From IMG/VR virus record IMGVR_UViG_3300042514_000542, positions 124,001 through 188,000 of that record: a stretch of DNA of 64,000 nucleotides; one strand, written 5' to 3'. The notes below the pieces were generated by a model. It was not told the origin of the DNA. It saw nothing but the letters and a program-made list of their open reading frames with translations, and searched no databases. The translations under genes and the position numbers were made by a program. This document shows positions 3,251 through 60,839 of the stretch, in pieces (within the stretch, counting starts at the first letter, position 1; each line of letters opens with the position of its first letter).

Positions 3251-4063
3251 ATGATACCCTTCAAACAGTTTTTCTTAGAGAATTTCACCAACTCGATAGA
3301 TAATGAATACTTTGAAGCAATCCATAATGATGACTTATCCAAAGTTCAGAATATGGTAGATATAAAAGCCAAAAATATGGGGTATAATGTTAAAGCTTGG
3401 CATGGGACACCTATTGGAGAGTTCGACACCTTTAAATTGAGTAAATCCTTCGGATCTTTATATTTTTTTGCTAAGACCGAAGAATACGCAAAGTATTACG
3501 CCAATAGATTTAAAGGATCACCTAACCCGACAGTTATGGGAGTTTTTTTAAAAATCGAAAATCCGTTAAAGGTTGATAAATTTGAACCAGAGGGTGTTAA
3601 AACGGCATATGAGTTAAGGAAAAAAGGATACGATTCGGTAGAGACACCTAATGCATATATAGTATTTCTACCAGATCAAATAAAATCTGCAAACCCAATC
3701 ACCAAAAAGGGTGATAAAATCATCCCACTATCTAAAAGGTTTAATGTAGAATCTAATCTACTGTCTGAATATCGTCACAATCTTGCTGATGGAACACCAT
3801 CACAATCTATTCAAGCGCATAATGGTAAAGATCCCAACCGTCTAGATAAAAAGATTCTACACACTGTAGGTGATTATAAGAAAGAGAATCCTAAGATGAA
3901 TATTCCGGGTAGTGTTCTAACACCAATGGAATTAGCCGATATGGGAATCACATACGAACATGGTAAAATTTTTCAAAATGTTAAGAATAGTGGATTCGGA
4001 ATTGAGATGACCTCTATTAATGGCAAACCAATGGGTCGAGTATTCAAGTCTCGTATTAAATAA
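3251..4063 (+). CDS. Capsid-targeted protein with ADP-ribosyltransferase-like (ART-PolyVal type) domain
   Basis: MIPFKQFFLE N-terminus; AWHGT...LYFF...VFLKIENPL...KGYDSV...YIVFLPDQIKS pattern; TAAATA 5 nt before ATG 3251. Confidence 0.6.
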   Translation: MIPFKQFFLENFTNSIDNEYFEAIHNDDLSKVQNMVDIKAKNMGYNVKAWHGTPIGEFDTFKLSKSFGSLYFFAKTEEYAKYYANRFKGSPNPTVMGVFLKIENPLKVDKFEPEGVKTAYELRKKGYDSVETPNAYIVFLPDQIKSANPITKKGDKIIPLSKRFNVESNLLSEYRHNLADGTPSQSIQAHNGKDPNRLDKKILHTVGDYKKENPKMNIPGSVLTPMELADMGITYEHGKIFQNVKNSGFGIEMTSINGKPMGRVFKSRIK

Positions 4064-9198: not shown

Positions 9199-11151
9199 TT
9201 ATTTATAGTAAGAAAGAACTTCCATGGTATCAAGTTTAAAATCATCATCATCCCAGACTTTCTCGTTGATAAGTTTTTCAAACATTTTGTCGAAGGATTC
9301 CTTTACCTTAACCTTTGTCCCATCTATATCAGTTTTTATAGCCGCATATAATCGCATAAATGAATTATATCTATTACCTCCGCTAATATCCATCGGTTTA
9401 GGACTTGCAAGTACCAATATATGACGCATCTTAAATGATTCGGGTAAGCCTAATTCGTTGATAAGTTCTCTAATCAAATCTTTACTAAGTTTATTAATCC
9501 ATACATCTCTAACCTTTAATCCGGTTAATGATGGAACTATCTCCAACAGTCTCGGTGACTTAAATTTCGCAGCGACACTATCAAATAACTCATCACCCTT
9601 CATACCCTTAAACGCTAACAAATATTCACTTAAAGTATCCCAAACATCACTCTTACTTTCGTCATATTCCTTACTCTTCAATTGAATGGGTTTAGTGGAA
9701 ACCCCTTTAAATACATTAAGTATAATGGAGAATGGTAACTTCTCAAAATCTCTAACTGATGTTATATTAGCATTTCTGTCGAGTTGTAAACTCGTCACAT
9801 ATTCTCTATTATCATACGCTCTTTGGAATCTCTCAAGATATCCTATGAATGGGTTAATATTAGGATCTTCTGATGTTAAGCATAGAAGTTTATCAATTTT
9901 ATCATTGTTACTTGACGGCATACCAGACCAACTAATTTGAGAAAAATCTTTGACTGTTTTTTCTTTAGGAACTTGTAGGTCTTTGATTATACGCCTAGCT
10001 GAAGAATTAACCTCGTCTATAAATTGAATTTGTGTTTCTTTATCTACTTTTTCGTTAATCGCATTGATTTGATTTATATGGTCTTCAACATTTTTCAAAT
10101 CGTTTACAACATCTCGATATTTTTCTTCCATTACTTCAATCTCTTCAATCAAATCTAAGATTTTAGCCTTTTCTCGAACAATAGCCGAACTACTTAAATT
10201 AGCATTTGTGTGCTTATCTTCCAGATTAATCTTTCGTCTAACCGCAGATCTATATCGTTTAACTTCAGGTAATGCTTTTTCGTATTTTTTACTATTAATT
10301 TTCTTCGTTAGGGATGATATATTATCACTAATAGTGGATATATTACTATTCAAATTTTTTACTTTAGTTACATCCTTCGTTAAAAGAATTTCATGATTCA
10401 AATTCTTCAAAAGTTTTGTTTTGGTTTCAATTTCACGATACATGTCATATATATCAAAGAAATGTGTGTTTTTACTTTTCTTATTGTTATCCTCTATCGC
10501 CTTGACTCTCGCAGATATTTCAGCATATAATTCCCTAAGTTGATTGAATTTAGTTGGTGAGGAATTATACTTTTCATAATCGTTTACCCTGACACGATAA
10601 TGTCGCAGTCGAGTTTGTAATTCTGTGACCTCTTCAGCCCTTTTAACCTTCATGAAATTGAGATTGTCTAATTTCTTCTCATAATCATACGCTTCTTTGA
10701 CTTCTCTACCTCTAAAATCTTCAACGGTTCTAGATAGCCCATACGATGCCCTCTGTTTACCAAAACTTGTAGCAAGTTTGTTAAAATTTGTAATGAATGT
10801 TGGATCATTAGCCAATAACCCAAAGCTGGTTGTGAAACTTGCGTACATCATAGATCCAGCAGCAGCACCTATATCACCACGCTTTTTAATATCCAATTTA
10901 CCATCCTTTGAAATATTATATTCGTATGGATTGAATTCCCATCTAGAAATCGGAACAACCGCTTCAGGGTTATCATTTCTACCAACTGAACTCGATCCAA
11001 CCTTACCTACAAATTTACCATCTCCTGCATTCACCATCTGAGTTGGGTCTGACTCCATAGCATTATGGATTCTAGCACCACCCATATTCTTAGGGGCTGA
11101 TGGTCTAAATCCCGCTTCGGTGACTAAATTGAACAGTTTTTCGAACTTCAT
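9199..11151 (-). CDS. Large coiled-coil putative internal head protein
   Basis: MKFEKLFNLVTE N-terminus, central coiled coil, KESFDKMFEKLINE C-terminal motif; late promoter. Confidence 0.6.
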   Translation of the reverse strand: MKFEKLFNLVTEAGFRPSAPKNMGGARIHNAMESDPTQMVNAGDGKFVGKVGSSSVGRNDNPEAVVPISRWEFNPYEYNISKDGKLDIKKRGDIGAAAGSMMYASFTTSFGLLANDPTFITNFNKLATSFGKQRASYGLSRTVEDFRGREVKEAYDYEKKLDNLNFMKVKRAEEVTELQTRLRHYRVRVNDYEKYNSSPTKFNQLRELYAEISARVKAIEDNNKKSKNTHFFDIYDMYREIETKTKLLKNLNHEILLTKDVTKVKNLNSNISTISDNISSLTKKINSKKYEKALPEVKRYRSAVRRKINLEDKHTNANLSSSAIVREKAKILDLIEEIEVMEEKYRDVVNDLKNVEDHINQINAINEKVDKETQIQFIDEVNSSARRIIKDLQVPKEKTVKDFSQISWSGMPSSNNDKIDKLLCLTSEDPNINPFIGYLERFQRAYDNREYVTSLQLDRNANITSVRDFEKLPFSIILNVFKGVSTKPIQLKSKEYDESKSDVWDTLSEYLLAFKGMKGDELFDSVAAKFKSPRLLEIVPSLTGLKVRDVWINKLSKDLIRELINELGLPESFKMRHILVLASPKPMDISGGNRYNSFMRLYAAIKTDIDGTKVKVKESFDKMFEKLINEKVWDDDDFKLDTMEVLSYYK

Positions 11152-11156
11152 ATAGT

Positions 11157-11180
11157 TATTTATCTCTAAAATGTTAAATA
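11157..11180. promoter_or_regulatory. Divergent pair of late promoters
   Basis: TAAATA 5 nt before ATG 11151 (-) and 5 nt before ATG 11186 (+). Confidence 0.8.
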
Positions 11181-11185
11181 AGTCT

Positions 11186-11743
11186 ATGGGAAAGAAATTT
11201 GACGCAATTTTTGAAGCAGTAGTATCAAGGTATCAGATTGGCGGGTATTTGCCGGGAGATATCGTGAAGTTTCGACCAAATTATAAATCAACACCAACAT
11301 ATAAAGCTATGCATTCTGAAATGCAGAGAGAGCTTGACGAATTGGTAAAAAGTGGACTTAATATCAAAGTTACTCAAGTCGGTTCAAAGACCTACAACCA
11401 ATCTTCCGCAAATGATCACAAAACCGCCGATAATGTAGTTATTACAATTGCTGGGGATCATGGTGGTGGTCGCCATTTCGGATCTATTACAGTTTCCCCA
11501 GAAATGATTGATATTGTTGGTGCTGGAGATCCCACACCACCTGTTGCATCTCAATTCTATAGAGACGATGAGAAGTATCTCAATGGTAAGACCGAAGAAT
11601 GGAAGGCAGACCAACAAAACATTACTAGAGTCACTGATAAAGGAAATGGTAAGAACACTCCAACCGATCTTAAATTAGCGGGAGAAGGAACTCGCCTTAA
11701 GAGGGATAATGATAATATGGCGATGCTCTATGAAGGACTTTGA
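11186..11743 (+). CDS. Hypothetical virion protein
   Basis: MGKKFDAIFE start after TAAATA-N5. Confidence 0.65.
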   Translation: MGKKFDAIFEAVVSRYQIGGYLPGDIVKFRPNYKSTPTYKAMHSEMQRELDELVKSGLNIKVTQVGSKTYNQSSANDHKTADNVVITIAGDHGGGRHFGSITVSPEMIDIVGAGDPTPPVASQFYRDDEKYLNGKTEEWKADQQNITRVTDKGNGKNTPTDLKLAGEGTRLKRDNDNMAMLYEGL

Positions 11744-12857
11744 TAAAAATAATATAGCGAAACTATATTTAGAAAATGTCAATCCAAACATCTCAGAAGA
11801 GGATCAGAAGAAACTTGCTGATTTTTTCGTTCAATTAGTTGTAAAAATTGAACAAGGTGATCAGGAAGCTCAACAATTACTAAACCTACCACCTGATCAA
11901 CTATTACAACATATTCAAAACTCTCAACAAGTCCAACAGGAAGCATTTGAAAATATTAGAAGTAGGATTGGTGGAGCATTTAAAGGAACTGGGCCAGCAC
12001 AGCAAAGATATGGAATTCTGCTCAAGAATGTTCAAAAGAAGTTGTGGGAGTTGGGACAAGATATCCAATCGACACAAGATCAGAATAATATAGCGTCATA
12101 TCAAGATCTTATATCCCAAGTTCAAGCAGTTGAACCAACAATGGTTCCCACACCGGGATCTCTTCAACAATTGGGATATAATATTGGGAAGGGTGTTGGG
12201 GCTGTAGGTAAGATAGCGGGAACAGTGGCAGGTGCAGGATTAATAGCCAGCACATTATCCACGGTGGGTCTTCCCATTGCTGCGGTTGGTGCTGTTGTTG
12301 GTGGTGGTATCAGCACACTCAAAAACCTATCAAACACCAACATGACTCCGGGTGAAAAGATTAAAAAAGCTTTGATAAGCGCAGGACTCGGTGCTGTTAC
12401 GGCATATGCTCTTAGTGAATTGAGAGATGCTATGTCCGACACATCAATGGATGCGGCAAGAGCAGAAGCGGATAGAATAGACCTAAATGGGGAAACGCTT
12501 AGAAGTTCTGAAGAATTAATAGATCAAGGCGTTGAAGGTGTCCCAGAAACGGGAGTTGCTCAAGGCGTTGAAGGTGTCCCAGAAACGGGAGTTGCTCAAA
12601 ACGCATCCGGTGGGATAGATTCTACCGCAAAAGTACGTATTGCGGCTCCAGATCTTCCGAATTCCGAACGAATTGCATTCACTAGAGGTAAAATACAAGC
12701 ATTGCGACAATTGACCGCACATTTAGGGACTGATACAATACGGGGTGTCACATATGATCAAGTTATTGGTGCAGATGGTAATATGTATGTTACCGCTAAA
12801 TGGTCACAGGCAATGTCGGATACTGCTGCTAAAATTTCTAGACAGATGGGAAATTAA
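11730..12857 (+). CDS. Putative ejected/membrane-active head protein with Gly/Ala-rich hydrophobic hairpin
   Basis: Start MKDFDKNNIAKLYLE at 11730; GKGVGAVGKIAGTVAGAGLIA...AVGAVVGGGI segment. Confidence 0.55.
   Translation: MKDFDKNNIAKLYLENVNPNISEEDQKKLADFFVQLVVKIEQGDQEAQQLLNLPPDQLLQHIQNSQQVQQEAFENIRSRIGGAFKGTGPAQQRYGILLKNVQKKLWELGQDIQSTQDQNNIASYQDLISQVQAVEPTMVPTPGSLQQLGYNIGKGVGAVGKIAGTVAGAGLIASTLSTVGLPIAAVGAVVGGGISTLKNLSNTNMTPGEKIKKALISAGLGAVTAYALSELRDAMSDTSMDAARAEADRIDLNGETLRSSEELIDQGVEGVPETGVAQGVEGVPETGVAQNASGGIDSTAKVRIAAPDLPNSERIAFTRGKIQALRQLTAHLGTDTIRGVTYDQVIGADGNMYVTAKWSQAMSDTAAKISRQMGN
12524..12599 (+). repeat. Perfect 36-bp tandem duplication (QGVEGVPETGVA x2)
   Basis: caaggcgttgaaggtgtcccagaaacgggagttgct at 12525-12560 and 12561-12596. 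Confidence 0.95.
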
Positions 12858-12860
12858 ACA

Positions 12861-13163
12861 ATGAATAAACAAGATCAAATAAATATAGCGCAACTCTACG
12901 AAGAAGGGTTATGGGATAGGATGAAAGCATCGGCTTCCGGTGTATCTGCTGGAGTCAAAGGGTTCTTGGGTGGTAATGGTTATGCTAAATCGGCACAATC
13001 GGCAAAAAAATCCAGCTTAATGAGGGGTAAACTTTCATCAATATTGCAAGATATTCAAAAATTTGAAACTGACATGGGAAGATATAAAAATGATCCGTCT
13101 GCATCGACATTCTCACAAAAAACATCTCAAATTAAACAAATAATTAACAATTTCAATAAATAA
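12861..13163 (+). CDS. Small putative head protein
   Basis: MNKQDQINIAQLYEE-GLWDRMKA. Confidence 0.65.
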   Translation: MNKQDQINIAQLYEEGLWDRMKASASGVSAGVKGFLGGNGYAKSAQSAKKSSLMRGKLSSILQDIQKFETDMGRYKNDPSASTFSQKTSQIKQIINNFNK

Positions 13164-13167
13164 TATT

Positions 13168-13821
13168 ATGTCAGCATACAATCGCAGCGATATGAAACTT
13201 CTTGAAGAAGCCTATAACCTTAGACTCCTTAAAGAACAAGCCCCACACATGACAATCAATGATGTAAAGAACCGTTTACATCTGATGAATGAATCAGAAC
13301 TGGAATATATTAACACTGTTAACGAAAGAATTCTTAATGAATTCTGGGGTGGACTTAAAAGTGTCGGTCAAGGAATTAAAAATGCTGGTGGTGCGGCTTT
13401 ACAAGCTGGTAAGAATGCTGGGAATGCTGCTCTACAGGCTGGAAAGGCTGCTGCTGGGAATGTAGCCAATGCTGCTTCTGCGGCTGGACAGGGCGCACTT
13501 GCCGCTGGCAAACAAGTCGTAGATAATGCTAAGGACATGTATAGTGCTGGTAATGTCGCATCACAATCCGATGAAGCAATTACTAAGGCTCAGACATCAA
13601 TGCAACAACTTATCGACCTTGTAACACAAGCACAAGCAAATGGTCTTATTAAGGCTCAAGGTGATGTTACAGACATGACATTAGCTGATATCATCGATGA
13701 ACTTACAACTGCACAACAATCAGCACAAACATTCAAGCAAGGGGCGCAAACTAAAGGATTTACTGGTGGTGCTGGACAAGCAGCTAAAGCTGCATATCAA
13801 GGAGCGAGACAACCAATTTAA
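13168..13821 (+). CDS. Ala/Gly/Gln-rich putative head protein
   Basis: KNAGxAALQAG repeats, ILNE-FWGGLK motif, TAAATA-N5-ATG. Confidence 0.65.
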   Translation: MSAYNRSDMKLLEEAYNLRLLKEQAPHMTINDVKNRLHLMNESELEYINTVNERILNEFWGGLKSVGQGIKNAGGAALQAGKNAGNAALQAGKAAAGNVANAASAAGQGALAAGKQVVDNAKDMYSAGNVASQSDEAITKAQTSMQQLIDLVTQAQANGLIKAQGDVTDMTLADIIDELTTAQQSAQTFKQGAQTKGFTGGAGQAAKAAYQGARQPI

Positions 13822-14735
13822 ACGTCCTCTAAATTCAACAAACATGCAAAGAAATTAATCTCTTTGTCATTAACACGGGTAGCTTTATCCAAATGGTCGG
13901 CAATGGTAATAATCATTGCCTTCTTTTTTGAATCATCTATGGATTGATCGTAAATATAATTCAATAGATCTACTAAAAGTTGCTCCCAATCAGAGTTGAA
14001 CTGTGCATCGTTTGCAATTAGATGCTTTCTAGTCTCCAAGGACTTCTTAGACACTACATTCTTGAAGACCATATCACATAATTGTGAATTGTTGATAGAT
14101 TCTCCAATAGTTAGAACTCCATTCACACAATGCTTCTGTAGTTCACCAATACACTTTCTTAAATCTGGAAATGATTGCTTAACTAGACGAATTACCTGTT
14201 TCTTCTGATCCTGATCAATTTCAACACCTTCAGACTTGAGAATGTTTAAACATCTAATGACTGTATCTCTCAATGTGGATCTTATGTCAAAACTTTGACA
14301 ACGAGATTGGACGGCAACACTAATTTTATGTCTTGAGTTACCAGTTAGAATGAATCTAGCTGAATTAGCATAAGATTCCATAAGATTTCTCAAACATTTT
14401 TGACCATCTATCGTCAAACCATCCGCTTCATCTAAAATGACAAGCTTCAAATTACCATCCAGACTTTTGGTTTGAACGAATCCGGTGACTTTGTTTCGGA
14501 TAGTATCGATACCATTCTCATCGGATGCATTGATATAAAGATAGTCACAATCCAATATAGTCTGAGCTAAAATTCTAGCTAATGTGGTTTTACCCGATCC
14601 GGGTTTACCTATAAATAATAAGTGAGGAATTTCATTACCCCAACTTAAAATTATCTCTCGTAATTCATCTGATATACAGAGATCATCAAGAGTCTGTGGG
14701 CGGTATTTTTCAATCCAAAGGTTGTCGTATCTCAT
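13818..14735 (-). CDS. 44: Clamp loader ATPase subunit (gp44/RFC small subunit-like)
   Basis: LWIEKYRPQ, GKPGSGKTT, INASDENG, ILDEAD, SRC. Confidence 0.95.
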   Translation of the reverse strand: MRYDNLWIEKYRPQTLDDLCISDELREIILSWGNEIPHLLFIGKPGSGKTTLARILAQTILDCDYLYINASDENGIDTIRNKVTGFVQTKSLDGNLKLVILDEADGLTIDGQKCLRNLMESYANSARFILTGNSRHKISVAVQSRCQSFDIRSTLRDTVIRCLNILKSEGVEIDQDQKKQVIRLVKQSFPDLRKCIGELQKHCVNGVLTIGESINNSQLCDMVFKNVVSKKSLETRKHLIANDAQFNSDWEQLLVDLLNYIYDQSIDDSKKKAMIITIADHLDKATRVNDKEINFFACLLNLEDV

Positions 14736-15466
14736 ATCTCTTTCAGAAAGATATCACGATTGGTTCTTTTGTCAAGAGCGCGAACAAATTCGGCACACTC
14801 CAATAGATCGTCATGTGTGCCACAATCAAACCAAACCCCGTCAAATTCATCAACCCCAACACCCTCTTCCAAATCCATAGCACGAATAAGATCAACTATT
14901 TCCAATTCCCCTCTATGTGATGGTCTGATAGTCTTAGCTAGTTCTACAGCTTTATTGGTGAATACATATAATCCTATAACAGCATCATTACTGACAAATG
15001 TTGAAGGTTTTTCAACTAAATGTGAAATACATCCAAATTCATCACATTTAACCACACCATACGCTGATGGATCTTTAACTTTATATGTGAAAATGGTGTT
15101 TGGTTGGGAATTTAATGGACTACCACCCAAAAATACATTATCACCCAATATCAAAGTAACATCATCATCACCAATAAATTCCTCACCTAGAATAAATGCT
15201 TCAGCTAATCCATTAGCCTCTCCTTGTATCACATATTGGATATTGACACCATATTTTTTACCATAATACAAATATCCTAGAAATATATCTAATTGTTCTT
15301 CTGAAGAAACTATAATTAAAATGTCCTTAATACCCATGTCGATCAAAGTCTTCAATGGGTAAAATATCATTGGTTGTTTATACACTGGTAGTAATTGCTT
15401 ACTAATACCATATGTTAATGGATATAGTCTACTACCCTTACCTCCAGCTAAAATTATTCCTTTCAT
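14732..15466 (-). CDS. rmlA: Glucose-1-phosphate thymidylyltransferase
   Basis: KGIILAGGKGSRLYPLT, SKQLLPVY, LGDN, EKP, RGELEI, WFDCGT. Confidence 0.93.
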   Translation of the reverse strand: MKGIILAGGKGSRLYPLTYGISKQLLPVYKQPMIFYPLKTLIDMGIKDILIIVSSEEQLDIFLGYLYYGKKYGVNIQYVIQGEANGLAEAFILGEEFIGDDDVTLILGDNVFLGGSPLNSQPNTIFTYKVKDPSAYGVVKCDEFGCISHLVEKPSTFVSNDAVIGLYVFTNKAVELAKTIRPSHRGELEIVDLIRAMDLEEGVGVDEFDGVWFDCGTHDDLLECAEFVRALDKRTNRDIFLKEI

Positions 15467-16371
15467 ACTCCTCGAACCCCGTTTATACCATTACAAACCA
15501 TATTCAAAATTTCATCTTCTGTGTGTAGTTTACAAATCTTCGATGCCTTAGTATTATTCAATACACAATTACTTCTAGGTGCTGCTATATTGAGTTCATC
15601 GACAGACACCCAATTCGGGTCGAGTTTTCTCCAATTACCCCCATTCATATAATTCAACTTATCTATCACATTATATGTATCCATTGGCTCCGAATTAACC
15701 ACATTGTAAATGTCTTGCCCTAACCAATCCAAACATTTGGTGATGAGAGCTTCTATAAAATTACACAGATCTGGAATATATGTCTTAGAATTTGTGTAAT
15801 TAACAAGATTTGGATATTTCATGATCTTATTAAGATAATTTCTGGGATTATCTAGATCATTACAGATGGGCATCCTAACTCGAACAATCTTATTGTGTAG
15901 GTGGGATGACCCTAACTCAAATGCATGTTTACTTTTACTATAGAAACTGCTATAGTCGAAAAGACCAAAATCTGGAGTGTCTTTTTCGGTATATTCCTTC
16001 AAATATCCACTATATATACATCCTGAAGAGATGTGGATATATCTAATCCCCAATCTATTACATAATGAATTTATCCTAAGCGGCGATAGAACGTTCAACT
16101 CCCAACACTCTGGTTTACGTGATTCAGCTTCATCTACATTTGGCTTTCCAGTAAACCCAGAACAATTAACCACATAATCAATATTGTGATTTAAAAGGTA
16201 TTTCGAAAGTTCCGATAAATCGTGGTAGTTGATGTGTTTACTACTAATAATCTCCACATTAAATTTACCACTATTCGTAAGATAGTGATGTAGGGCTGAT
16301 CCGATATATCCCGAACCCAAAATACAAATTTTATCCTTCAATGGACTCTTCAATAAATTCTCTGATGTCAT
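15463..16371 (-). CDS. NDP-4-keto-6-deoxyhexose epimerase/reductase (RmlD/NRS-ER-like SDR)
   Basis: LGSGYIG, GFTGKPNVD, SSGCIY, YSKSK catalytic motif; start uncertain. Confidence 0.8.
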   Translation of the reverse strand: MTSENLLKSPLKDKICILGSGYIGSALHHYLTNSGKFNVEIISSKHINYHDLSELSKYLLNHNIDYVVNCSGFTGKPNVDEAESRKPECWELNVLSPLRINSLCNRLGIRYIHISSGCIYSGYLKEYTEKDTPDFGLFDYSSFYSKSKHAFELGSSHLHNKIVRVRMPICNDLDNPRNYLNKIMKYPNLVNYTNSKTYIPDLCNFIEALITKCLDWLGQDIYNVVNSEPMDTYNVIDKLNYMNGGNWRKLDPNWVSVDELNIAAPRSNCVLNNTKASKICKLHTEDEILNMVCNGINGVRGV

Positions 16372-35004: not shown

Positions 35005-35079
35005 ATTCTTATTATTGTTTTAGTTTATTTTCTAGTTTTGTTTGTTTTGTTTGAAGGTTTTCACCTTCAAAAGTATTTA
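35005..35079 (-). promoter_or_regulatory. Gene 32 leader: promoter, GAAA-tetraloop hairpin and unstructured A-rich tract
   Basis: TAAATA 35074-35079; stem 35050-35071; A/C-rich 45 nt up to the ATG. Confidence 0.6.
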
Positions 35080-35770
35080 ACGTAAGTTTTAAATTATTCA
35101 ATCTCGCTTCTCTCATTTTTTGTTTTGTCTCTTCAGAATGCTTATAACCTAATCTGGCAGTTCTTGCATTTTCTTTATGCTCTTCCGACAAAGGTTTTCC
35201 TATTTTCGATTCTCTAATTTTAATCTTTGTTTCTTCCGACATTTGTTTTCCCATTTTCGAGATTCTCATCTTTTCTTTCGACTCTTCGGTATGTTTCCGT
35301 CTTCGACACTTTTCTTTGAAAGAATCAGATTTTGGTTTTTTCATTTTATTTTTTGTATATTCCGAATGTTTCTTACCCCTTTGACCTTCACTCATTCTTT
35401 TCCGAACTTCTTCAGAGCATTTATATCCAGTTCTATCAGTTGAATATTTACAGATATTATATCCTATATTTCTATCGGTGGAATTATAGATTCCAATATA
35501 ATGAGCCTCTCTATCAAAAAGTTTTTCTTTATCTAAATTTTTATTAAAATTTTCAAATATTTCTAGTATATCTATTTCAAAATTTTCCCACCCATATTTA
35601 ATCAATGCATTTTCAAAATGAAATCGTCCAAATTTTCTATTACAACACGATTTATGATACGACAATCTATTATAGATATTTACGGATTTACCTATATATA
35701 TTTTACCACTTACTATACAGACAAGTTTATATATTCCCGCCTTCTTTGGTATTTCCATTGTTTGATTCAT
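35012..35770 (-). mobile_element. GIY-YIG homing endonuclease with NUMOD3 repeats (Seg-like)
   Basis: GIYKL...IYIGKS, GYN, HSEETKQKM repeats. Confidence 0.92.
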
Positions 35771-36410: not shown

Positions 36411-36679
36411 TTCTTATTACTATTCAAAAATTTTGTGACGTATTTGCTTTTTGCAATCGTCGGATCGAAATCTAAGAACACCCTAACAAGCTCATAGTCA
36501 GTGTCAAGGTTTAGAATCTCCTTTAAAATTGTTTTTAACTTTTCACTTGAGAGTGTTTGAATGAAAACGTTCTGAATAGAAAGCTTTTTACCTTTCAAGT
36601 TCATGACGAATGTGCAAAAACATAAGAAAAGGTGAGTTGATTCCTCATCCTCGATATTTTGTGAAGGATCAGTTATCAT
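36407..36679 (-). CDS. Hypothetical protein
   Basis: Likely start MITDPSQ at 36679, overlapping the HEG end. Confidence 0.6.
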   Translation of the reverse strand: MITDPSQNIEDEESTHLFLCFCTFVMNLKGKKLSIQNVFIQTLSSEKLKTILKEILNLDTDYELVRVFLDFDPTIAKSKYVTKFLNSNKK

Positions 36680-37517
36680 TTTTAATTTCCAACCTTTCTC
36701 TTTTAGATTGTCTAATTTTCTCTTTGGTTTCTTCCGAACATTTTTTTCCAGTATTAGCGATTGAAATCTTCGCCTTTGCTTCCTCTGAACACGGAACACC
36801 TTTTTTAAGATTACTCATATTTGATTTCCATTCATCTGTTCTTTTTTTACCTTTATTTTTCATACTAATTTTTTTTCTGGTTTCTTCAGAACAAAGTCTA
36901 CCTAGTCTAGCCGCACTCATTTTTTTCCTAGTTTCTTCGGATACTATATGAGTAGTTATTCTACCTTTTCTCTGTATACTCATTTTTTCCTTCGAATTTT
37001 CTGAATGTTTTTTACCCAATCTATGATTTCTTATTTTTTCCTTTGCATCGTCGGACATTTTCTTACCTAATCTACATTGTCTAAGTTGTTCTCGTTTCTC
37101 GTCGTCAAAAATCCTTATTACTTTTTTCTGTGCTTGACTCATTTTCAGTTTAGATTCTTCTGAACAAATATGTCCAGTTCTATCCGTTGAATGTTTACAA
37201 ATATTATAACCCTTTTCATTATTAGTGGTATCAAACATCTCAATAAATTTGGTTTCCGTGTCGAGAAGTTGTTGATTATGTTCTGGATTTGATTTAATAA
37301 AATTTTCAAAAACATCTAAAATTTCAACGGTAAATGAATCCCATCCATATTTTACAATGGCGTGTGCTATTTTATATTTTTTATTGGGTATAATCTTAGA
37401 TTTTCTATGATCATTTATTCTACGTTTAATGTTGATGGTCTTTCCTATGTATACTTTATTGTTTGTCAAACATGTCAATTTATAAATTCCTGCCGCTTTT
37501 GGATATTCTAATATCAT
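36669..37517 (-). mobile_element. GIY-YIG homing endonuclease with NUMOD3 repeats
   Basis: GIYKL...VYIGKT, many SEETRKK repeats; start 37517 after TAAATA-N5. Confidence 0.92.
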
Positions 37518-37598
37518 GTATATATTTAGTAATCCGAGTCGTTTCTTCTTCAATTAAATTTGTTAATAGGTCAATAAGATCTGATGACGGGTCGTAAT

Positions 37599-40904: not shown

Positions 40905-42896
40905 ATGACTAAATATGGATTTGACTATTTTACCAAACGTGCAGAACTCTTAACAGAGATGGCTAGAACGACTACCCGCTATAATGGGTTGAATGTTGGA
41001 GGTGAATATGATTATGATTTCGTTGCTCTTAGAGCGAAAGTGTTGAATGCTATTAAAAGTGGAATGTCCCCGCATAATGCGTCAGATCCGTTGGTAGATG
41101 AAGACGGGAAAACTGCAACAGGTGTGGTTGATGGATCTCAATATAGATCATTGATATACATGTTTTCTAAAGTGTATAATACGATATTAGATAATGAAGA
41201 GTTTGATATCGATGCCGATGTTGAATTTGAAAATGCTAAGGGTTTACTATCATCGGACATATCCAAACTGCCAGTTAGCGAAGATGTTCACGCGATTATA
41301 TATGAAATACAAAATCAAATCAAGGAAAATGGTATTAAATTAGATAAACCTACATTAGATAATGTAACTAGAGAAATTATATCAAAATACGTTCCAAATA
41401 TTGCGGAAATTTTAAAGGCTCATGATAGTGGAGATAAGAATTCGGGAATAGAAGAGCTTCCTGTAATTCCCGTTGATATTTATCGAGATCCCTCAAGGTT
41501 CTTATCATCTTTATTTGAAATCCGTAATTCTAAAACCACTAGTGGTAGAAAAGTAGTCGATGACCCCAATAAAAAACCCGGAAAACAACCCACTCTTATA
41601 GAAGAATATACTAAAAAAATGCAATCTTTGGCAAGGAAAATATATAAACAATATGTCGAAAACCCCAAAAAAGCACCAAGCGGTCCAGAAATTTTTGAAG
41701 CTGCCACTATCGTCCTCATAAAAAAGCATCCGGAATTAATTTTCGATAAATCATTTGTAAATTCCGTATTAGATCCTGTAAATATTGCCACTTTTATCAA
41801 TAAAGGGGAGTCAGGTGAGGGGATTGTCGTACTGGATCATGAAACATCAAAACTGGCAGCAAGAAATATTGGTGAAATGTATGGTATAAACGCTAAATCT
41901 TATAATGAGTTGATGTCGAAGTCTAGAAAGGTCAGAACACAATTAAGTTATCTATCTCGCGCAGATGCAAAGAGAAAAGTGAAAACTTCCCCGACTGTAG
42001 AAAAAAAATCAAGTCCCGATAAATTAGATAATTTACATACCCAAAACGTAGATAACATTCTTACTATATTACTAGCTTTAAAAGAAGACAAGATCGACTT
42101 GGATGAACAGATTGAAATTAAGAGTGAATTATTTAAGGACCCTTACGATGTGATCCTAACAATACATGACGAAACAGACGTTCCAATAAAGTGGATAACA
42201 TCAATGATGAAGCTCAAGGGTACACAAGTTATCGACAGATTATACGATGTTTTTCTTACATTAGAAAATGTAGGAATTGATATTGACACTTTTAATGAAA
42301 ATATGGAGGAGTTAAAATCAAAAAAACCAGAATTGGTGGGGTTTATCGATATTTTCACTAAAGACGTTTCACTAAAAATAAAAGCAGATACTCCAAAGTC
42401 GAATGTCCTTAGTTTTCCGGGATTCGCCCAAGAACATATTGAAAAAGTTCTCGATACTCCAGAAAAGAAAAACATCTTCTCCACTTATTATAATTATATC
42501 TATGTTAAAGATTTGAAGCGAGCAGCCGCAGAAGTTCAGCAAAAATTAGACGTTGATGCAGGTAAAGAAGTTGTGGGAAAACCAGTTACCCTATATGCTA
42601 TGCGTCAAGCTGAAAAGAATTTCCAAAAGAGTAGTGGTAAGTTTGGTAATAGGGGTGAAAATATGGAACGTGAGGCAGAACTAGCTAAACGTGAGAAGGA
42701 CAAAGAATTTAAAAAGGATCAAAATAAACTAAGCAAGGGGATACAAGATATAATCGGTAAACCTCTACGCAACGAATCATATGTTATGAATTATATGACA
42801 GAACAATTCCAAAAAGATAGGTTCAAAACCAAAGGTGAATTTAAAGATCGTGGATACAAAAAACCAACCAATTACTGGCAAGGTAGAAACCTATGA
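40905..42896 (+). CDS. Large putative internal head protein
   Basis: Late promoter, LLTE-MAR site; inserted antisense in the replication block. Confidence 0.65.
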   Translation: MTKYGFDYFTKRAELLTEMARTTTRYNGLNVGGEYDYDFVALRAKVLNAIKSGMSPHNASDPLVDEDGKTATGVVDGSQYRSLIYMFSKVYNTILDNEEFDIDADVEFENAKGLLSSDISKLPVSEDVHAIIYEIQNQIKENGIKLDKPTLDNVTREIISKYVPNIAEILKAHDSGDKNSGIEELPVIPVDIYRDPSRFLSSLFEIRNSKTTSGRKVVDDPNKKPGKQPTLIEEYTKKMQSLARKIYKQYVENPKKAPSGPEIFEAATIVLIKKHPELIFDKSFVNSVLDPVNIATFINKGESGEGIVVLDHETSKLAARNIGEMYGINAKSYNELMSKSRKVRTQLSYLSRADAKRKVKTSPTVEKKSSPDKLDNLHTQNVDNILTILLALKEDKIDLDEQIEIKSELFKDPYDVILTIHDETDVPIKWITSMMKLKGTQVIDRLYDVFLTLENVGIDIDTFNENMEELKSKKPELVGFIDIFTKDVSLKIKADTPKSNVLSFPGFAQEHIEKVLDTPEKKNIFSTYYNYIYVKDLKRAAAEVQQKLDVDAGKEVVGKPVTLYAMRQAEKNFQKSSGKFGNRGENMEREAELAKREKDKEFKKDQNKLSKGIQDIIGKPLRNESYVMNYMTEQFQKDRFKTKGEFKDRGYKKPTNYWQGRNL

Positions 42897-43660
42897 ACGA
42901 ATTCATAAATTTATATAAATCTCTAATGTTGGAGATGGCTAGACCCTCATCACTTGGGCCAAAAATGTTGGGTGATGAATTATTCAAAAAATTCAACACA
43001 TTATTAGCTGAAGTTAATGATAGGTTCAAGTATGGCGTTCACAAATATCCAGAACTAGTAGACTTTAAAGGGGAAGAAGCATATGGTCTACACGATAAAG
43101 TTTTACAAGAGAGGAAACTTAGATATTTCTTTTTTTGTTTAAACAAAAACTATAAAAATTTAGATTATAAAGAAGAAATTACCATGGATAATGAGAGAGC
43201 TAGATCCATAGGCGAAATGACACAATACTGTAAACAAAAAGGAATACATTATAGTCTCGGATCAATTAGAATGACCACTTCTGCTATTTTTGAAAAAATA
43301 AAAGACGATGAGAAGTGGTTTTTGTCAAAAAACTTCCAAAAGATATTATTAGATCCTAAACTTATGGCTAGTTATATGAATGCTTCGAGGGAGACATTTA
43401 ACCAATCATCTATAAATGCCGCAGCAAAACGTGAGAAAGAGGGTGGAATGGGTATACGAGATCTAGATAAATTCAGGGCAGAATACCGTGATGTAGATAA
43501 AGCATTAAGTTACAAGGAGAGGGGTACGGGTCTTAAACAAAAAGCCGCAGAAAAAAGAGAAAAGATTGAAACTCTTCGTAAGAAAAAAGAGATGGCTAAT
43601 GCGAAGCGTAAACAGACATGGGCTAATAAGAAACTAAACAAAAAAACCCAAGGAATTTAA
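42893..43660 (+). CDS. Putative internal head protein, partial paralog of preceding gene
   Basis: LMLE-MAR; shared F...LDP...A.(F/Y).N and LSY..R segments. Confidence 0.65.
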   Translation: MNEFINLYKSLMLEMARPSSLGPKMLGDELFKKFNTLLAEVNDRFKYGVHKYPELVDFKGEEAYGLHDKVLQERKLRYFFFCLNKNYKNLDYKEEITMDNERARSIGEMTQYCKQKGIHYSLGSIRMTTSAIFEKIKDDEKWFLSKNFQKILLDPKLMASYMNASRETFNQSSINAAAKREKEGGMGIRDLDKFRAEYRDVDKALSYKERGTGLKQKAAEKREKIETLRKKKEMANAKRKQTWANKKLNKKTQGI

Positions 43661-53967: not shown

Positions 53968-54343
53968 CGCTCATTTCATTTTCATAAACCATCTGTTTAT
54001 ATTCTTCCAGACCTTCGTGTTGTCTATTCTCTTTCTTGATACGATTGGAAAATGCATTCCATGCAATCTGATTGAAGTATGAGAATGGATTGAATTCTGA
54101 TTCAATCTTAAATTTCTTATCTTCCAATGCTGAATACATCTTCAAAATGGCATCACCCACCATCTCATCTTTCCATGTGTAATTGATAAACCTATAATTA
54201 TAACTAAGACCTTCAGCAATCTTAACTATGTTCAAGGCTAGTTCATTCGACATTACATCATCCTCGTAGTATTTCTCCAATTGCTGGCGAAATAGTTTTG
54301 ATGACACATAATACTTCTCTTTAACGTCTTTATTTGTTATCAT
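53897..54343 (-). CDS. 55: Late transcription sigma factor (gp55)
   Basis: KIAEGLS...FINYTWKDEMVGDA, NPFSYFNQIAWNAF..RIKKE. Confidence 0.93.
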   Translation of the reverse strand: MITNKDVKEKYYVSSKLFRQQLEKYYEDDVMSNELALNIVKIAEGLSYNYRFINYTWKDEMVGDAILKMYSALEDKKFKIESEFNPFSYFNQIAWNAFSNRIKKENRQHEGLEEYKQMVYENEMSDASQGSVYVRPMLEHDSEDGCYD

Positions 54344-55077
54344 AATTCTTTATTCTTTCTTGGTCGTTTACTTCCACTATTTCTTAACCTGCTCGCCTCA
54401 CCTATTCTTTTTCTAGTTTCTTCTGAATGGGTGTATGTAGAATTTTTTCTTGATTCTCTCATCTTTTCCTTTGTCTCTTCTGATAGAGGGATTCCCACCT
54501 TAAGTTGTCTCAATTTTTCTTTAGTTTCTTCACTCGTCTTATACCCCAATCTTACATTTCTCATTTTTTCCTTGGTTTCATCCGATACTTTCCTCCCCAA
54601 ATTAGACTTTCTATTTTTTTCATTAGATTCTTTTGAATGGTGTTTACCTATTCTCGAAAGCCTTATTTTTTCTCTAGTTTCTTCGGATTTTGGTTTCCTC
54701 ATTTTTTCTTTAGATTCTTCTGAATGATAATATCCGGTTCTATCTCGGGAATATTTGCATATATTATAACCTATATCATTATTTGTAGAATCTAGTAGTG
54801 ATATATAATGAGATTCTAGTTCTAATAGATCCGTATTATCTTTAAATTTATCAAAATTTTCATAGATCTCTAATATCTCAATAGTGAATGAATTCCATCC
54901 ATATTTTTTAATAACGTGTTGTAAATAACACTTGCCTTGCTTTTTATTTTCACAATATTTATGAGATATAAATCTATTTTTCAGGTTTATCGATTTTCCC
55001 ACATATATCTTATTTGTCACACCACATGTTAATTTATATACTCCAGCAACATTTTTATATTCAGAATAATTATTCAT
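54340..55077 (-). mobile_element. GIY-YIG homing endonuclease with NUMOD3 repeats
   Basis: GVYKL...IYVGKS, GYNICKYS, SEETKEK repeats. Confidence 0.92.
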
Positions 55078-59901: not shown

Positions 59902-60342
59902 ATGAGAAGTTTCAAGCAATATTTTGTAGAGAAAACCGTTTTAGGTTTGGAAGAAACTATCTACGTTGATGGTGTTGGACAACTACGTGCGAAATTAGAC
60001 ACGGGAAATGGAGCGTTTAATGTTCTACATGGACAGAAAATTCAAATAGATGGTGATATGGTTAGGTTCACCACTGAAAATGGTGTGGTATTAGAGAAAC
60101 CTATTTCAGATCATATAACAATTAACTTGGGTGCTGGTAATACCGAAGATCGTCCAGTGGTATTATTAAATATAAAAATGGGTGATAAGATTTTCAAGGA
60201 TATCCCATTCTCAATCGGAAACAGATCACAAAATACCCATAAAGTTTTAATTGGTAAGAGCTTCATACAAAATGAATTAGATGCATTAATTGATGTGGGT
60301 CTTGTAGATGTAGCTAAAAGAAATATAGAAGTTAATATATGA
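59902..60342 (+). CDS. Retropepsin-like (RimK-associated type) aspartic peptidase with capsid-targeting-like N-terminus
   Basis: AKLDTG, EDRPVV, FSIGNRS, VLIG; MRSFKQYFVE. Confidence 0.8.
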   Translation: MRSFKQYFVEKTVLGLEETIYVDGVGQLRAKLDTGNGAFNVLHGQKIQIDGDMVRFTTENGVVLEKPISDHITINLGAGNTEDRPVVLLNIKMGDKIFKDIPFSIGNRSQNTHKVLIGKSFIQNELDALIDVGLVDVAKRNIEVNI

Positions 60343-60839
60343 AAAAGTTTACTCAAAAAGAATTGTTGAATGAGGGGTTTTGGGACAGTTTTCCAGCTAG
60401 AGTTCTTAAGGGTGCTGCTGTTGTTGGTAAATTTGCGACTAAGACACTCGCACCTGAAATATACAACCCTATCTCCAGTGTGGTGTCGGGAATTAAAGAT
60501 CTAAATCAACAATTGATTAAAGCTACCACACCAGAGGCTTCATATATAATAAATAAATTGGCGAATCAAGGATATTCAATAGTTGGTGATATTGGTAAGA
60601 TTAAAATGAGACAAGGGGATGATAAACAATTGTATAAAGTATCAGTTGTAATAAGACAAAATTTTATCAGTTCTGGAGAACCCAATCCTCAAAAAATATT
60701 CTTAGTGGACAAAGATGGTAATATAGTAAGAGATTTAAGTGCTAAAAACGCCGCAAAGGGTGGGAAAAAACCACAAAAACAAAGAGTTTCACCAGTTGTA
60801 ACAAATCCACAAACCAAAAAAGTTCCACCGAAACCTTGA
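60339..60839 (+). CDS. Putative head/internal protein
   Basis: LLNE-GFWDS motif. Confidence 0.65.
   Translation: MKKFTQKELLNEGFWDSFPARVLKGAAVVGKFATKTLAPEIYNPISSVVSGIKDLNQQLIKATTPEASYIINKLANQGYSIVGDIGKIKMRQGDDKQLYKVSVVIRQNFISSGEPNPQKIFLVDKDGNIVRDLSAKNAAKGGKKPQKQRVSPVVTNPQTKKVPPKP

What the first reader, a model, noticed from the sequence alone, without database searches (positions are those of the whole stretch)
11730..13821. Cryptic antimicrobial-peptide-like N-termini exposed by predicted protease cleavage
Seen in sequence: E-GLWDRMKASASGVSAGVKGFLGG (12861), E-FWGGLKSVGQGIKNAGGAALQAGK (13168) and E-AFENIRSRIGGAFKG plus a Gly/Ala hydrophobic hairpin (11730); also E-GFWDSFPARVLKGAAVVGKF at 60339. 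These are cationic, Gly/Ala-rich amphipathic helices that resemble dermaseptin/cecropin-type peptides in pattern. Inference: a cluster of pro-proteins activated in the head and ejected to breach the membrane or form a DNA conduit.
Basis: inference. Interest (0 to 1): 0.65.

Follow-up and report, generated by a model that had tools for sequence, protein, structure and literature searches.

The report
Protease-trimmed phage head cargo proteins
An uncultured T4-like phage carries late genes whose products begin with T4-style capsid-targeting leaders ending in a conserved protease-type Glu site, so they are probably trimmed, packaged head proteins; their resemblance to antimicrobial peptides is only moderate and untested.

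Summary
They lie in four adjacent + strand genes, which I call U190, A375, B100 and C217, and in a fifth gene, D166, at 60339. The window is part of a 206.6-kb uncultured, distant T4-like myovirus that encodes a gp21-type (Peptidase_S77) prohead protease.

In metagenomic homologues the predicted Glu sites are the best-conserved positions:
- **C217:** L-x-E|A-Y is kept in 63/63 clusters, with the x position hypervariable. A second hydrophobic-x-E sits just before F-W-G-G.
- **B100:** [LI]-Y-E-E-G..D-R is invariant in 36 sequences.
- **U190:** F5 and E10 are invariant in 21 sequences.

The leaders resemble the T4 IPII/IPIII capsid-targeting sequence. At least 10–15 other proteins of this genome carry a similar leader, including an ART-PolyVal ADP-ribosyltransferase. 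Two A375 orthologues carry this other leader type instead. U190 and C217 sit behind the same TAAATA motif that precedes the structural genes.

"Pro-proteins processed in the head" is therefore well supported by inference. The antimicrobial-peptide analogy is weak. Hydrophobic moments fall in the 87th–93rd percentile, charge is +1 to +2, and there is no homology. Only A375 has a transmembrane-grade (glycine-zipper) segment, and its "E|AFEN" site is non-canonical. Cleavage, packaging, ejection and membrane activity are all untested.

The parts
11175..11180 (+). TAAATA late-promoter-like motif, 5 nt upstream of the U190 ATG at 11186. A mirror copy on the - strand at 11157-11162 serves the divergent 650-aa gene.
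   Evidence: The same motif, 3-9 nt before the start codon, occurs at 79 ORFs. These include the protease, scaffold, sheath, tube, gp6 and gp25 homologues. It is absent at the clamp loader and the 856-aa ORF I took for the DNA polymerase (not family-scanned).
11186..11743 (+). U190, with the real start at the sixth codon of the longest ORF. It is a conserved core protein of the clade. The 10-residue leader ends I-F-E|A (11186-11215). A conserved L-Y-E lies at the C-terminus (11726-11734).
   Evidence: F5 and E10 are invariant in 21 homologues down to 26% identity. The C-terminal [LI]-Y-E is conserved, and in relatives it is followed by different fused modules. No Pfam, PHROG or PDB match.
11730..12857 (+). 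A375. The leader ends L-Y-L-E15|N (11730-11774). An invariant Q-x-E71-A-F-E-N block lies at 11934-11954. A glycine-zipper hydrophobic region spans residues 149-232 (12174-12425). The C-terminal domain is variable and holds a perfect 36-bp tandem duplication (12524-12599).
   Evidence: A 19-residue Kyte-Doolittle window reaches 1.6 or more only at about residues 171-198. The N-terminal ~235 residues are conserved and the C-terminus varies. There are 23 clusters, all hypothetical.
12861..13163 (+). B100. The leader occupies 12861-12905 and ends [LI]-Y-E-E. The Gly/Ala-rich amphipathic start G-L-W-D-R... occupies 12906-12974. The predicted mature protein is basic (pI 10.2). It always lies directly downstream of A375.
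   Evidence: The junction is invariant in 36 sequences. A375 and B100 are adjacent in every locus found. Hydrophobic moment 0.398 and Gly+Ala at the 99th percentile.
13157..13162 (+). Second TAAATA motif, 5 nt upstream of the C217 ATG.
13168..13821 (+). C217. Canonical site L12-x-E14|A15 (leader 13168-13209). Second site I-L-N-E58|F-W-G-G (13210-13341 would be a second propeptide piece). A Gly/Ala/Lys-rich region with 11-residue repeats spans 13342-13539, followed by a helical C-terminal domain.
   Evidence: Conserved in 63 clusters. A 33-bp tandem repeat lies at 13377-13453. Long-range amphipathicity peaks at 100 degrees (92nd percentile).
60339..60839 (+). D166. The 12-residue leader (F4, ending L-L-N-E12|G) occupies 60339-60374. 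The amphipathic start G-F-W-D... occupies 60375-60488. The predicted mature protein is basic (pI 10.1).
   Evidence: The junction is conserved in two homologues although leader length varies. The gene lies in a + strand run of small genes that carry similar leaders.

Best explanation
U190, A375, B100, C217 and the separate D166 are late-expressed pro-proteins of a distant T4-like myovirus. Each begins with a short leader that works like the T4 capsid-targeting sequence. The leader brings the protein into the scaffolding core of the prohead. The phage's gp21-type serine protease then removes it by cutting after a Glu that has a hydrophobic residue at P3. C217 probably loses a two-part, 58-residue propeptide. 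The mature products stay in the head with the DNA as internal proteins and most likely leave with it at infection.

B100 and D166 (pI about 10) and C217 would then begin with Gly/Ala-rich, Trp/Phe-bearing amphipathic segments. A375 carries a glycine-zipper hydrophobic hairpin and is the one credible membrane-inserting member. B100 is always encoded next to it and is probably its partner.

Shown here: the sequences, their conservation, the protease gene, the leader family and the promoter-like motif. Inferred: targeting, cleavage, packaging and ejection. The most speculative step is action on the host membrane, at about 0.3.
For: 1. The genome encodes a Peptidase_S77 protease (E 3e-30, above the cut-off). 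It is 31% identical to T4 gp21 and conserves the GELNHP and GVS(S/T)R blocks. The scaffold and major capsid genes follow it.
2. The capsid protein has C-[LIF]-[EQ]-E|[AS] conserved in four genomes of the clade.
3. T4 IPII and IPIII begin M-K-T-Y-Q-E-F-I-A-E|A. In T4 the rule is L/I-x-E, the capsid-targeting sequence is 10-19 residues long, residues 4 and 7 target, and residues 8 and 10 govern processing (PMC9026906).
4. Conservation matches that rule. U190 keeps F5 and E10 in 21 sequences. C217 keeps L12, E14 and A15 in 63 of 63 clusters with a hypervariable P2, and its second site slides in register while always keeping hydrophobic-x-E. The B100 junction is invariant in 36 sequences. E15 of A375 is invariant.
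5. Leaders are swapped between orthologues. Two full-length A375 orthologues (36% identity) carry M-D-x-F-S-T-F-F-E|N in place of N-I-x-x-L-Y-x-E, and the two Glu residues align.
6. The leader M..F[KSEQT].[FYL][FYIL] occurs 10 times at N-termini and nowhere else in the proteome. Shuffling within N-termini gives a mean of 0.51 and a maximum of 4. Carriers include an ART-PolyVal ADP-ribosyltransferase, a PolyA_pol/HD enzyme and proteins of 592-1054 residues. The ADP-ribosyltransferase parallels T4 Alt.
7. In relatives the U190 C-terminal L-Y-E joins different fused modules, as expected of a cleavable junction.
8. The locus is plastic. The A375-B100 cassette is present or absent, gene order changes and fusions occur.
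9. TAAATA-N3-9-ATG precedes the structural genes, U190, C217 and most leader-bearing genes, but not the clamp loader or the ORF I took for the DNA polymerase.
10. There is a precedent: SPN3US gp47 is a processed ejection protein whose mature part begins with a transmembrane helix (PMC5694885).
Against: - There is no experimental datum. The phage is uncultured and has no cultured relative carrying these genes.
- B100 lacks an aromatic residue at position 4, and its leader belongs to a second class known only from this clade.
- The A375 second site has Q/N at P3.
- In U190 of this phage the C-terminal L-Y-E is followed by only two residues. Its conservation may therefore reflect binding rather than cleavage.
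- Blocks conserved across a junction (E-E-G..D-R, Q-x-E-A-F-E-N) could be structural motifs unrelated to proteolysis.
- The leader regex was defined after looking at the data.
- Lysis genes are also late genes, so the promoter-like motif does not prove a virion location.
- The structure models are of low confidence (mean pLDDT 38 and 52).
- Amphipathicity is moderate.
Confidence: 0.55

Rival explanations
1. These are prohead core or DNA-associated internal proteins with no membrane role. They are targeted and trimmed as in the main explanation. The Gly/Ala/Lys-rich segments act inside the capsid, in core assembly, in binding the inner shell or in neutralising DNA charge, like the basic T4 internal proteins or the core proteins gp67 and gp68.
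For: - Mature B100 and D166 have pI about 10, and C217 after its second site has pI 8.9.
- A 148-aa gene between the protease and scaffold genes has a similar F-F-G-A-A...K-K segment.
- Hydrophobic moments are only in the 87th-93rd percentile.
- None of B100, C217 or D166 has a transmembrane-grade segment.
- C217 and U190 are core genes of the clade, as expected of assembly components.
Against: - The A375 glycine-zipper hairpin is hard to explain inside a capsid.
- Trp/Phe is conserved at positions 2-3 of the predicted new N-termini in three unrelated families.
- The A375-B100 cassette is accessory, not core.
Confidence: 0.25
2. These are not virion proteins. They are late membrane or lysis-associated proteins of the infected cell, for example a holin/antiholin-like A375-B100 pair or superinfection-exclusion proteins. 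On this view the conserved N-terminal blocks are ordinary structural or interaction motifs.
For: - A375 has hydrophobic segments and a variable C-terminal domain.
- Lysis genes are late genes too, so the promoter-like motif fits.
- No virion proteome exists.
- A generic hydrophobic-x-E is not enriched at N-termini.
Against: - A375 orthologues swap their leader for the same M..F..FFE leader that heads the ART-PolyVal and other large soluble proteins.
- At C217 site 1, P2 is hypervariable while P3, P1 and P1' are invariant, which is the signature of a cleavage site.
- B100, C217, D166 and U190 have no transmembrane segment.
- A375 (375 aa) is larger than typical holins, which are small (my recollection, not tested here). 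It matched no PHROG family of any kind, holin families included.
- The cassette is missing from close relatives.
Confidence: 0.12
3. The resemblance to antimicrobial peptides is a compositional coincidence with no functional meaning, whatever the proteins do.
For: - There is no homology to any family.
- Charge is +1 to +2 and the hydrophobic moment is below the 95th percentile.
- B100 is amphipathic only over about 20 residues.
- The junction regex is not enriched.
Against: - Gly+Ala enrichment is extreme.
- The start of the mature part is the most conserved region of B100 and D166.
- Profile comparison of four unrelated families aligns only these junction regions.
Confidence: 0.45

Closest known systems
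T4 internal proteins IPI/IPII/IPIII and their capsid-targeting sequence, processed by gp21 (Mullaney and Black 1996, as reviewed in PMC9026906)
   Same: - A short N-terminal leader ends in hydrophobic-x-Glu.
- An aromatic or hydrophobic residue sits near position 4 (U190, D166, A375, C217).
- Mature products are small and basic (B100, D166).
- The cargo set is hypervariable while the leader is conserved.
- A gp21-type protease is encoded in the genome.
   Different: - There is no sequence homology of the mature parts.
- A second leader class (N-I-x-x-L-Y-x-E) exists here.
- The same motif also occurs at the C-terminus of U190 and between fused modules.
- The leader-bearing set is much larger (at least 10-15 proteins, up to 1054 aa).
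- Nothing has been tested experimentally.
Processed ejection proteins of giant phages (SPN3US gp47; phiKZ and 201phi2-1 inner-body proteins; PMC5694885, PMC9026906)
   Same: - Head proteins are cut after Glu by a gp21-related protease.
- Propeptides can hold several sites.
- The mature part of gp47 begins with a predicted transmembrane helix and is thought to meet the host membrane.
- The loci are divergent between relatives.
   Different: - The giant-phage motif is S/A/G-x-E and the propeptides are mostly longer than 100 residues.
- This phage is T4-like in its leader and motif.
- There is no homology.
T4 Alt (packaged ADP-ribosyltransferase processed by gp21)
   Same: The ART-PolyVal protein at window 3251-4063 carries the class-I leader. 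This supports reading the leader as a packaging signal.
   Different: That gene lies outside the finding's cluster. The Pfam family is different, and homology to Alt was not tested.
Ejection proteins of short-tailed phages (P22 gp7/gp16/gp20; T7 gp14/15/16; PMC8402733, PMC8954989)
   Same: Internal virion proteins leave with the DNA and build a trans-envelope conduit. Some have membrane-active segments, as proposed for A375 with B100.
   Different: - Those are podovirus systems and I recall no protease-removed leader in them (from memory, not checked).
- There is no homology.
- A contractile-tail phage already has a tube that reaches the membrane.
Adenovirus protein VI (and similar maturation-activated lytic peptides of non-enveloped viruses)
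   Same: An internal capsid protein cut by the viral maturation protease carries a membrane-disrupting amphipathic peptide (10.1101/857581).
   Different: Adenovirus is a eukaryotic virus with an unrelated protease and unrelated proteins. The comparison is an analogy of logic only.
Dermaseptin/cecropin-type cationic helical antimicrobial peptides
   Same: The segment begins G/A-L-W, the sequence is rich in Gly, Ala and Lys, and helices are predicted.
   Different: - There is no homology.
- There is no signal peptide or acidic propiece.
- The charge is lower, and by my recollection the hydrophobic moment is also lower than typical for this class (no reference peptide was computed here).
- The segments are parts of 85-304-residue proteins, not free peptides.

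Membership tests
T4-type capsid-targeted, gp21-processed internal head proteins | The genome encodes a gp21-type (Peptidase_S77) prohead protease with conserved catalytic blocks. | tested here: met
   (102 bits, cut-off 27). One search shows 31% identity to T4 gp21 with GELNHP and GVS(S/T)R conserved. The assignment of His and Ser as catalytic residues is from memory.
T4-type capsid-targeted, gp21-processed internal head proteins | An N-terminal propeptide of about 10-19 residues ends in L/I-x-E, and P1 Glu is conserved. | tested here: met
   U190 E10 (21/21), C217 L12/E14 (63/63), B100 E14/E15 (36/36), A375 E15 (10/10) and D166 E12 (3/3). P3 is L, I, F, V or Y, so it is broader than in T4.
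T4-type capsid-targeted, gp21-processed internal head proteins | Targeting residues at positions 4 and 7 of the leader (aromatic or hydrophobic in T4 IPIII). | tested here: inconclusive
   F4 in A375 and D166, Y4 in C217, F5 in U190. B100 has Q4. Ten other proteins fit M..F..[FY][FY].
T4-type capsid-targeted, gp21-processed internal head proteins | The protein is physically present in the head and its leader is removed. | not testable with these tools
   The phage is uncultured and no proteome exists. The predicted complex of protease with B100 residues 1-45 gave no verdict.
T4-type capsid-targeted, gp21-processed internal head proteins | Late expression together with the structural genes. | tested here: inconclusive
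   TAAATA-N5-ATG lies before U190 and C217 and is shared with the protease, scaffold, sheath and tube genes. This is a sequence motif only, with no transcript data.
Cationic alpha-helical antimicrobial peptides (dermaseptin/cecropin type) | Sequence homology to the family, or the secreted precursor architecture (signal peptide, acidic propiece, short mature peptide). | tested here: not met
   No Pfam hit. The leaders lack a hydrophobic signal core. The mature parts are 85-304 residues long.
Cationic alpha-helical antimicrobial peptides (dermaseptin/cecropin type) | Strongly amphipathic, strongly cationic helix. | tested here: inconclusive
   Hydrophobic moment 0.38-0.44 (87th-93rd percentile) and charge +1 to +2 over 18 residues. 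C217 and D166 show long-range periodicity near 100 degrees.
Cationic alpha-helical antimicrobial peptides (dermaseptin/cecropin type) | Membrane-permeabilising activity. | not testable with these tools
   This needs liposome or cell assays.
Holins | A small membrane protein with one or more transmembrane helices that is essential for lysis and matches known holin families. | tested here: not met
   A375 has 375 residues and no PHROG or Pfam match. It is absent from close relatives. Two orthologues carry the capsid-type leader.
Podovirus ejection proteins (T7 gp14-16, P22 gp7/16/20) | Sequence or profile homology. | tested here: not met
   No PHROG, Pfam or PDB-sequence match.

The most novel reading that the evidence does not exclude
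Cleavage by the prohead protease arms these proteins. The new Gly/Ala-rich N-termini that begin G-[LF]-W or F-W-G-G, together with the glycine-zipper protein A375, would act like the fusion or lytic peptides of animal viruses: silent in the pro-form, then released with the DNA to open or line the host cytoplasmic membrane. That would be a maturation-activated membrane-penetration module in a contractile-tailed phage. It would be carried on a mobile two-gene cassette (A375-B100) and recur as a short junction motif in at least four unrelated protein families.
Probability: 0.2. Interest if true: 0.7.

Novelty: new member of a known kind. Interest (0 to 1): 0.45.

Why it matters
- **Reach of the T4 packaging logic.** If correct, the T4 pattern of a capsid-targeting leader plus a Glu-specific protease extends to a very distant, uncultured branch of T4-like phages. 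There it governs a much larger and more varied cargo, including enzymes and a membrane-type protein.
- **Finding injected proteins in metagenomes.** The two leader classes and the TAAATA-ATG signature give a simple sequence rule for finding packaged or injected proteins in metagenomic phage genomes. Such proteins are candidates for counter-defence and host take-over functions.
- **A testable question.** The A375-B100 pair and the conserved G-[LF]-W starts make it possible to ask whether myovirus heads deliver membrane-active proteins.
- **Limit.** The antimicrobial-peptide idea by itself is not a strong lead.

Tried and rejected
- **Cultured-phage search.** DNA and protein searches of the cultured-phage collection with the region, C217 and U190 found nothing.
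- **Family and structure-sequence searches.** PHROGs and Pfam gave no significant hit for U190, A375, B100 or C217, and Pfam none for D166, which was not scanned against PHROGs. The weak PspC/RTX hits on the A375 hydrophobic region (E 0.09-0.3) were ignored. PDB sequence-profile searches with the three family alignments gave nothing below E 0.027.
- **Structure prediction.** AlphaFold2 models were all-helical but of low confidence (A375 mean pLDDT 38.4, C217 51.8). I ran no fold search because matches to such models would be meaningless.
- **ESM Atlas.** Best scores were 0.76 and 0.82, below the level at which a hit is even a lead.
- **Predicted complex.** Protease with B100 residues 1-45 gave no verdict, which is neither support nor evidence against.
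- **Homology between the families.** Rejected. Profile comparison aligns only 9-22 columns at the junctions of B100, D166, C217 and the U190 extension.
- **Genome-wide enrichment tests.** Neither the junction regex (6 observed, 4 expected) nor generic hydrophobic-x-E at N-termini (342 observed, 332 expected) is enriched.
- **Exact T4 late-promoter octamer.** TATAAATA is not enriched in the window (9 observed, 13 expected). The shorter TAAATA placed next to start codons is the real signal.
- **Not used.** The sequencing-run and read-mapping tools (reads cannot show proteolysis), the large representative-protein search (not needed), and any alternative genetic code.
Full report
**Context**

The window is bases 124001-188000 of a 206,590-bp IMG/VR virus record. 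The record encodes a Peptidase_S77 prohead protease (genome 4837-5505; 102 bits against a cut-off of 27). The protease gene is followed by a 148-aa gene, a scaffold-like gene and a major capsid gene.

The capsid protein is only about 32% identical to gp23 of T4-like cyanophages. The clamp loader is at best about 38% identical to any cultured phage. The phage is therefore a very distant, uncultured member of the T4 superfamily. Aligned with T4 gp21, the protease is 31% identical and keeps the GELNHP and GVS(S/T)R blocks.

The finding's region lies among structural genes: large terminase, a neck (head-closure) protein, and gp6- and gp25-like baseplate wedge proteins. It abuts the clamp loader gene.

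**Observation**

Four co-oriented genes fill 11171-13821. I call them U190, A375, B100 and C217.
- U190 really starts at 11186.
- A375 occupies 11730-12857.
- B100 occupies 12861-13163.
- C217 occupies 13168-13821.

D166 lies at 60339-60839. None of the five proteins matches Pfam, and the four cluster proteins (D166 was not scanned) match no PHROG family. Profiles of U190, A375 and C217 match no PDB sequence. tblastn with U190 and C217, and blastn with the region, found nothing in 50,697 cultured-phage records.

**Relatives**

I used the clamp loader as an anchor, and then the proteins themselves, to fetch about 100 related metagenomic viral loci. I also searched the 5.8-billion-protein collection.
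- U190 and C217 are core genes of the clade and lie beside the clamp loader.
- A375 and B100 form an accessory pair. They are always adjacent to each other. They are present in some relatives, absent in others, and sometimes sit elsewhere among structural genes.

**Conservation of the predicted sites**

- **C217, site 1.** L12 is conserved in 63/63 clusters, E14 in 63/63, A15 in 63/63 and Y16 in 62/63. Position 13 takes at least six different residues (E, T, S, Q, G, V and others).
- **C217, site 2.** In the others it is displaced by one or two residues, but a hydrophobic-x-E always remains just before the F-[WF]-G start.
- **B100.** [LI]12-Y-E-E-G16 and D19-R20 are invariant in 36 sequences and form the most conserved block of the protein.
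- **U190.** F5 and E10 are invariant in 21 sequences down to 26% identity.
- **A375.** E15 (leader) and Q69-x-E71-A-F-E-N are invariant. P3 of the second site is Q or N, so that site is not canonical.
- **D166.** [IL]-L-x-E|G-F-W is kept in both homologues although leader length varies.
- **Capsid protein.** C-[LIF]-[EQ]-E|[AS] is conserved in four genomes of the clade.

**Why these are read as capsid-targeting leaders**

T4 IPII and IPIII start M-K-T-Y-Q-E-F-I-A-E|A. The literature gives the gp21 rule as L/I-x-E. It describes capsid-targeting sequences of 10-19 residues in which positions 4 and 7 target and positions 8 and 10 govern processing (PMC9026906).

U190 (M-G-K-K-F-D-A-I-F-E|A) and D166 fit this closely. 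A375 has F4 and C217 has Y4.

Genome-wide, the pattern M..F[KSEQT].[FYL][FYIL] occurs ten times at N-termini and never elsewhere in about 51,500 residues. Shuffling within each N-terminus gives a mean of 0.51 and a maximum of 4 in 2000 trials. The pattern was defined after inspection, so the exact figures should be read with that in mind.

Proteins that carry this leader include:
- an ART-PolyVal ADP-ribosyltransferase (window 3251-4063);
- a PolyA_pol/HD nucleotidyltransferase;
- a DUF5661 protein;
- a PF05618 retropepsin-like protein (window 59902-60342);
- proteins of 592-1054 residues.

A packaged ADP-ribosyltransferase is what T4 Alt is, and Alt is processed by gp21 (PMC9026906).

Two full-length A375 orthologues (36% identity, E 1e-45) carry this class-I leader (M-D-x-F-S-T-F-F-E|N) where A375 has N-I-A-K-L-Y-L-E|N, and the two Glu residues align. 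The two leader classes are therefore interchangeable on one protein family. This is the strongest argument that the second class, found on A375 and B100, has the same job.

**Modular junctions**

The C-terminus of U190 ends in a conserved [LI]-Y-E. In this phage only two residues follow it. In relatives the same motif is followed by different fused modules, one of which begins ...L-D-E|G-F-L-R-R-L.

Profile comparisons show that B100, D166, C217 and this extension are not homologous overall. They align only over 9-22 columns around the junction. As a bare regex the junction is not enriched in the proteome (6 observed, 4 expected). Its significance therefore rests on conservation within each family.

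**Expression signal**

A TAAATA hexamer 3-9 nt before the start codon occurs at 79 ORFs.
- It precedes the protease, the 148-aa gene, the scaffold, the sheath, the tube, gp6, gp25 and the neck (head-closure) gene.
- It precedes most leader-bearing genes, including U190 (11175-11180) and C217 (13157-13162).
- It is absent before the clamp loader and the 856-aa ORF I took for the DNA polymerase (not family-scanned).
- It also precedes the GIY-YIG endonuclease genes.

It resembles the T4 late promoter TATAAATA (from established knowledge). The exact octamer is not enriched here. The motif independently supports the start codons that define the leaders.

**Physical chemistry**

Eighteen-residue hydrophobic moments (Fauchère-Pliska scale) of the predicted new N-termini:

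| Protein | Hydrophobic moment |
|---|---|
| B100 | 0.398 |
| C217 | 0.440 |
| A375 (from A72) | 0.403 |
| D166 | 0.380 |

These values fall in the 87th-93rd percentile of the phage's own proteome, and net charge is +1 to +2. Other properties:
- C217 residues 59-124 and D166 residues 13-50 show long-range periodicity peaking at 100 and 96 degrees (92nd and 96th percentiles). B100 is amphipathic only over its first 20 residues or so.
- C217 has 11-residue repeats, seen as a 33-bp tandem repeat.
- Gly+Ala in the first 40 mature residues is at or above the 99th percentile for B100 and C217.
- Mature B100 and D166 have pI about 10, and A375 has pI about 5.
- Only A375 has a segment that reaches a transmembrane threshold (about residues 171-198), within a run of small-xxx-small motifs.

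The structure models are helical but of low confidence.

**Interpretation**

The best reading is a set of late pro-proteins that are loaded into the prohead by leaders resembling the T4 capsid-targeting sequence and then trimmed by the gp21-type protease. In other words, they are new cargo families of a known system.

Whether the mature proteins act on the host membrane is open. A375 with its constant neighbour B100 is the credible candidate, and SPN3US gp47 provides a precedent (PMC5694885). B100, D166 and C217 could equally be DNA- or core-associated internal proteins. The dermaseptin/cecropin likeness is compositional only.

A closer functional analogy, if the membrane idea holds, would be the maturation-activated lytic peptides of non-enveloped viruses, such as adenovirus protein VI (10.1101/857581).

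**Limits**

Nothing here demonstrates cleavage, packaging, ejection or membrane activity. The predicted complex of protease with B100 residues 1-45 gave no verdict.

Noticed in passing
window 433 down to 2 (-), 3251-4063 (+), 9199-11151 (-), 42893-43660 (+), 58383-58823 (+), 59902-60342 (+); also genome 8468-10432, 18761-20489 and 37536-47464: A genome-wide family of at least 10-15 proteins begins with a leader like the T4 capsid-targeting sequence (M-x-x-F-[KS]-x-[FY]-[FY]-x-E). Members include an ART-PolyVal ADP-ribosyltransferase, a PolyA_pol/HD nucleotidyltransferase, a DUF5661 protein, a PF05618 retropepsin-like protein and proteins of 592-1054 aa. These are candidates for a large packaged or injected proteome.
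   Followed up: partly
window 11157-11162 (-), 11175-11180 (+), 13157-13162 (+); 79 sites genome-wide: A TAAATA hexamer lies 3-9 nt before start codons of structural, leader-bearing and homing-endonuclease genes, but not before the clamp loader or the 856-aa ORF I took for the DNA polymerase. It looks like a late promoter placed so close to the ATG that the mRNAs would be nearly leaderless. It also corrects several start codons, for example U190 and the ART gene.
   Followed up: partly
window 11726-11743: U190 ends L-Y-E-G-L-stop and overlaps the A375 start by 14 nt, with A375 in the +1 frame. In relatives U190 is fused at the same L-Y-E to other modules. Whether a fused product is ever made here by frameshifting was not examined.
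   Followed up: no
window 12524-12599: A perfect 36-bp tandem duplication (2.1 copies) in the variable C-terminal part of A375 encodes a repeated 12-residue unit. Close relatives have one copy.
   Followed up: partly
genome 5514-5960 (outside the window; L002 1615-2061): A 148-aa gene between the prohead protease and scaffold genes has an N-terminal F-F-G-A-A...K-K Gly/Ala/Lys segment like those of C217 and B100. It sits roughly where T4-like phages keep small prohead-core genes. It has a weak DUF3008 hit only (E 8e-4, below the cut-off).
   Followed up: partly
window 35012-35770 (-), 54340-55077 (-); probably also 36669-37553 (-): Several GIY-YIG/NUMOD3 homing-endonuclease genes are scattered among the replication genes (Pfam hits for the first two). 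Each is preceded by the TAAATA motif.
   Followed up: partly
window 14732-16371 (-): A nucleotidyl-transferase gene (PF00483, E 4e-53) and an RmlD/epimerase-like gene lie directly after the clamp loader. They suggest nucleotide-sugar synthesis by the phage, possibly for DNA or surface modification.
   Followed up: partly
L113 (JGI 3300045416 contig), 682-2097: In this relative the A375-B100 pair, here with the class-I leader on A375, sits next to a tail-tube-like gene rather than next to U190 and the clamp loader. The pair therefore moves as a unit.
   Followed up: partly
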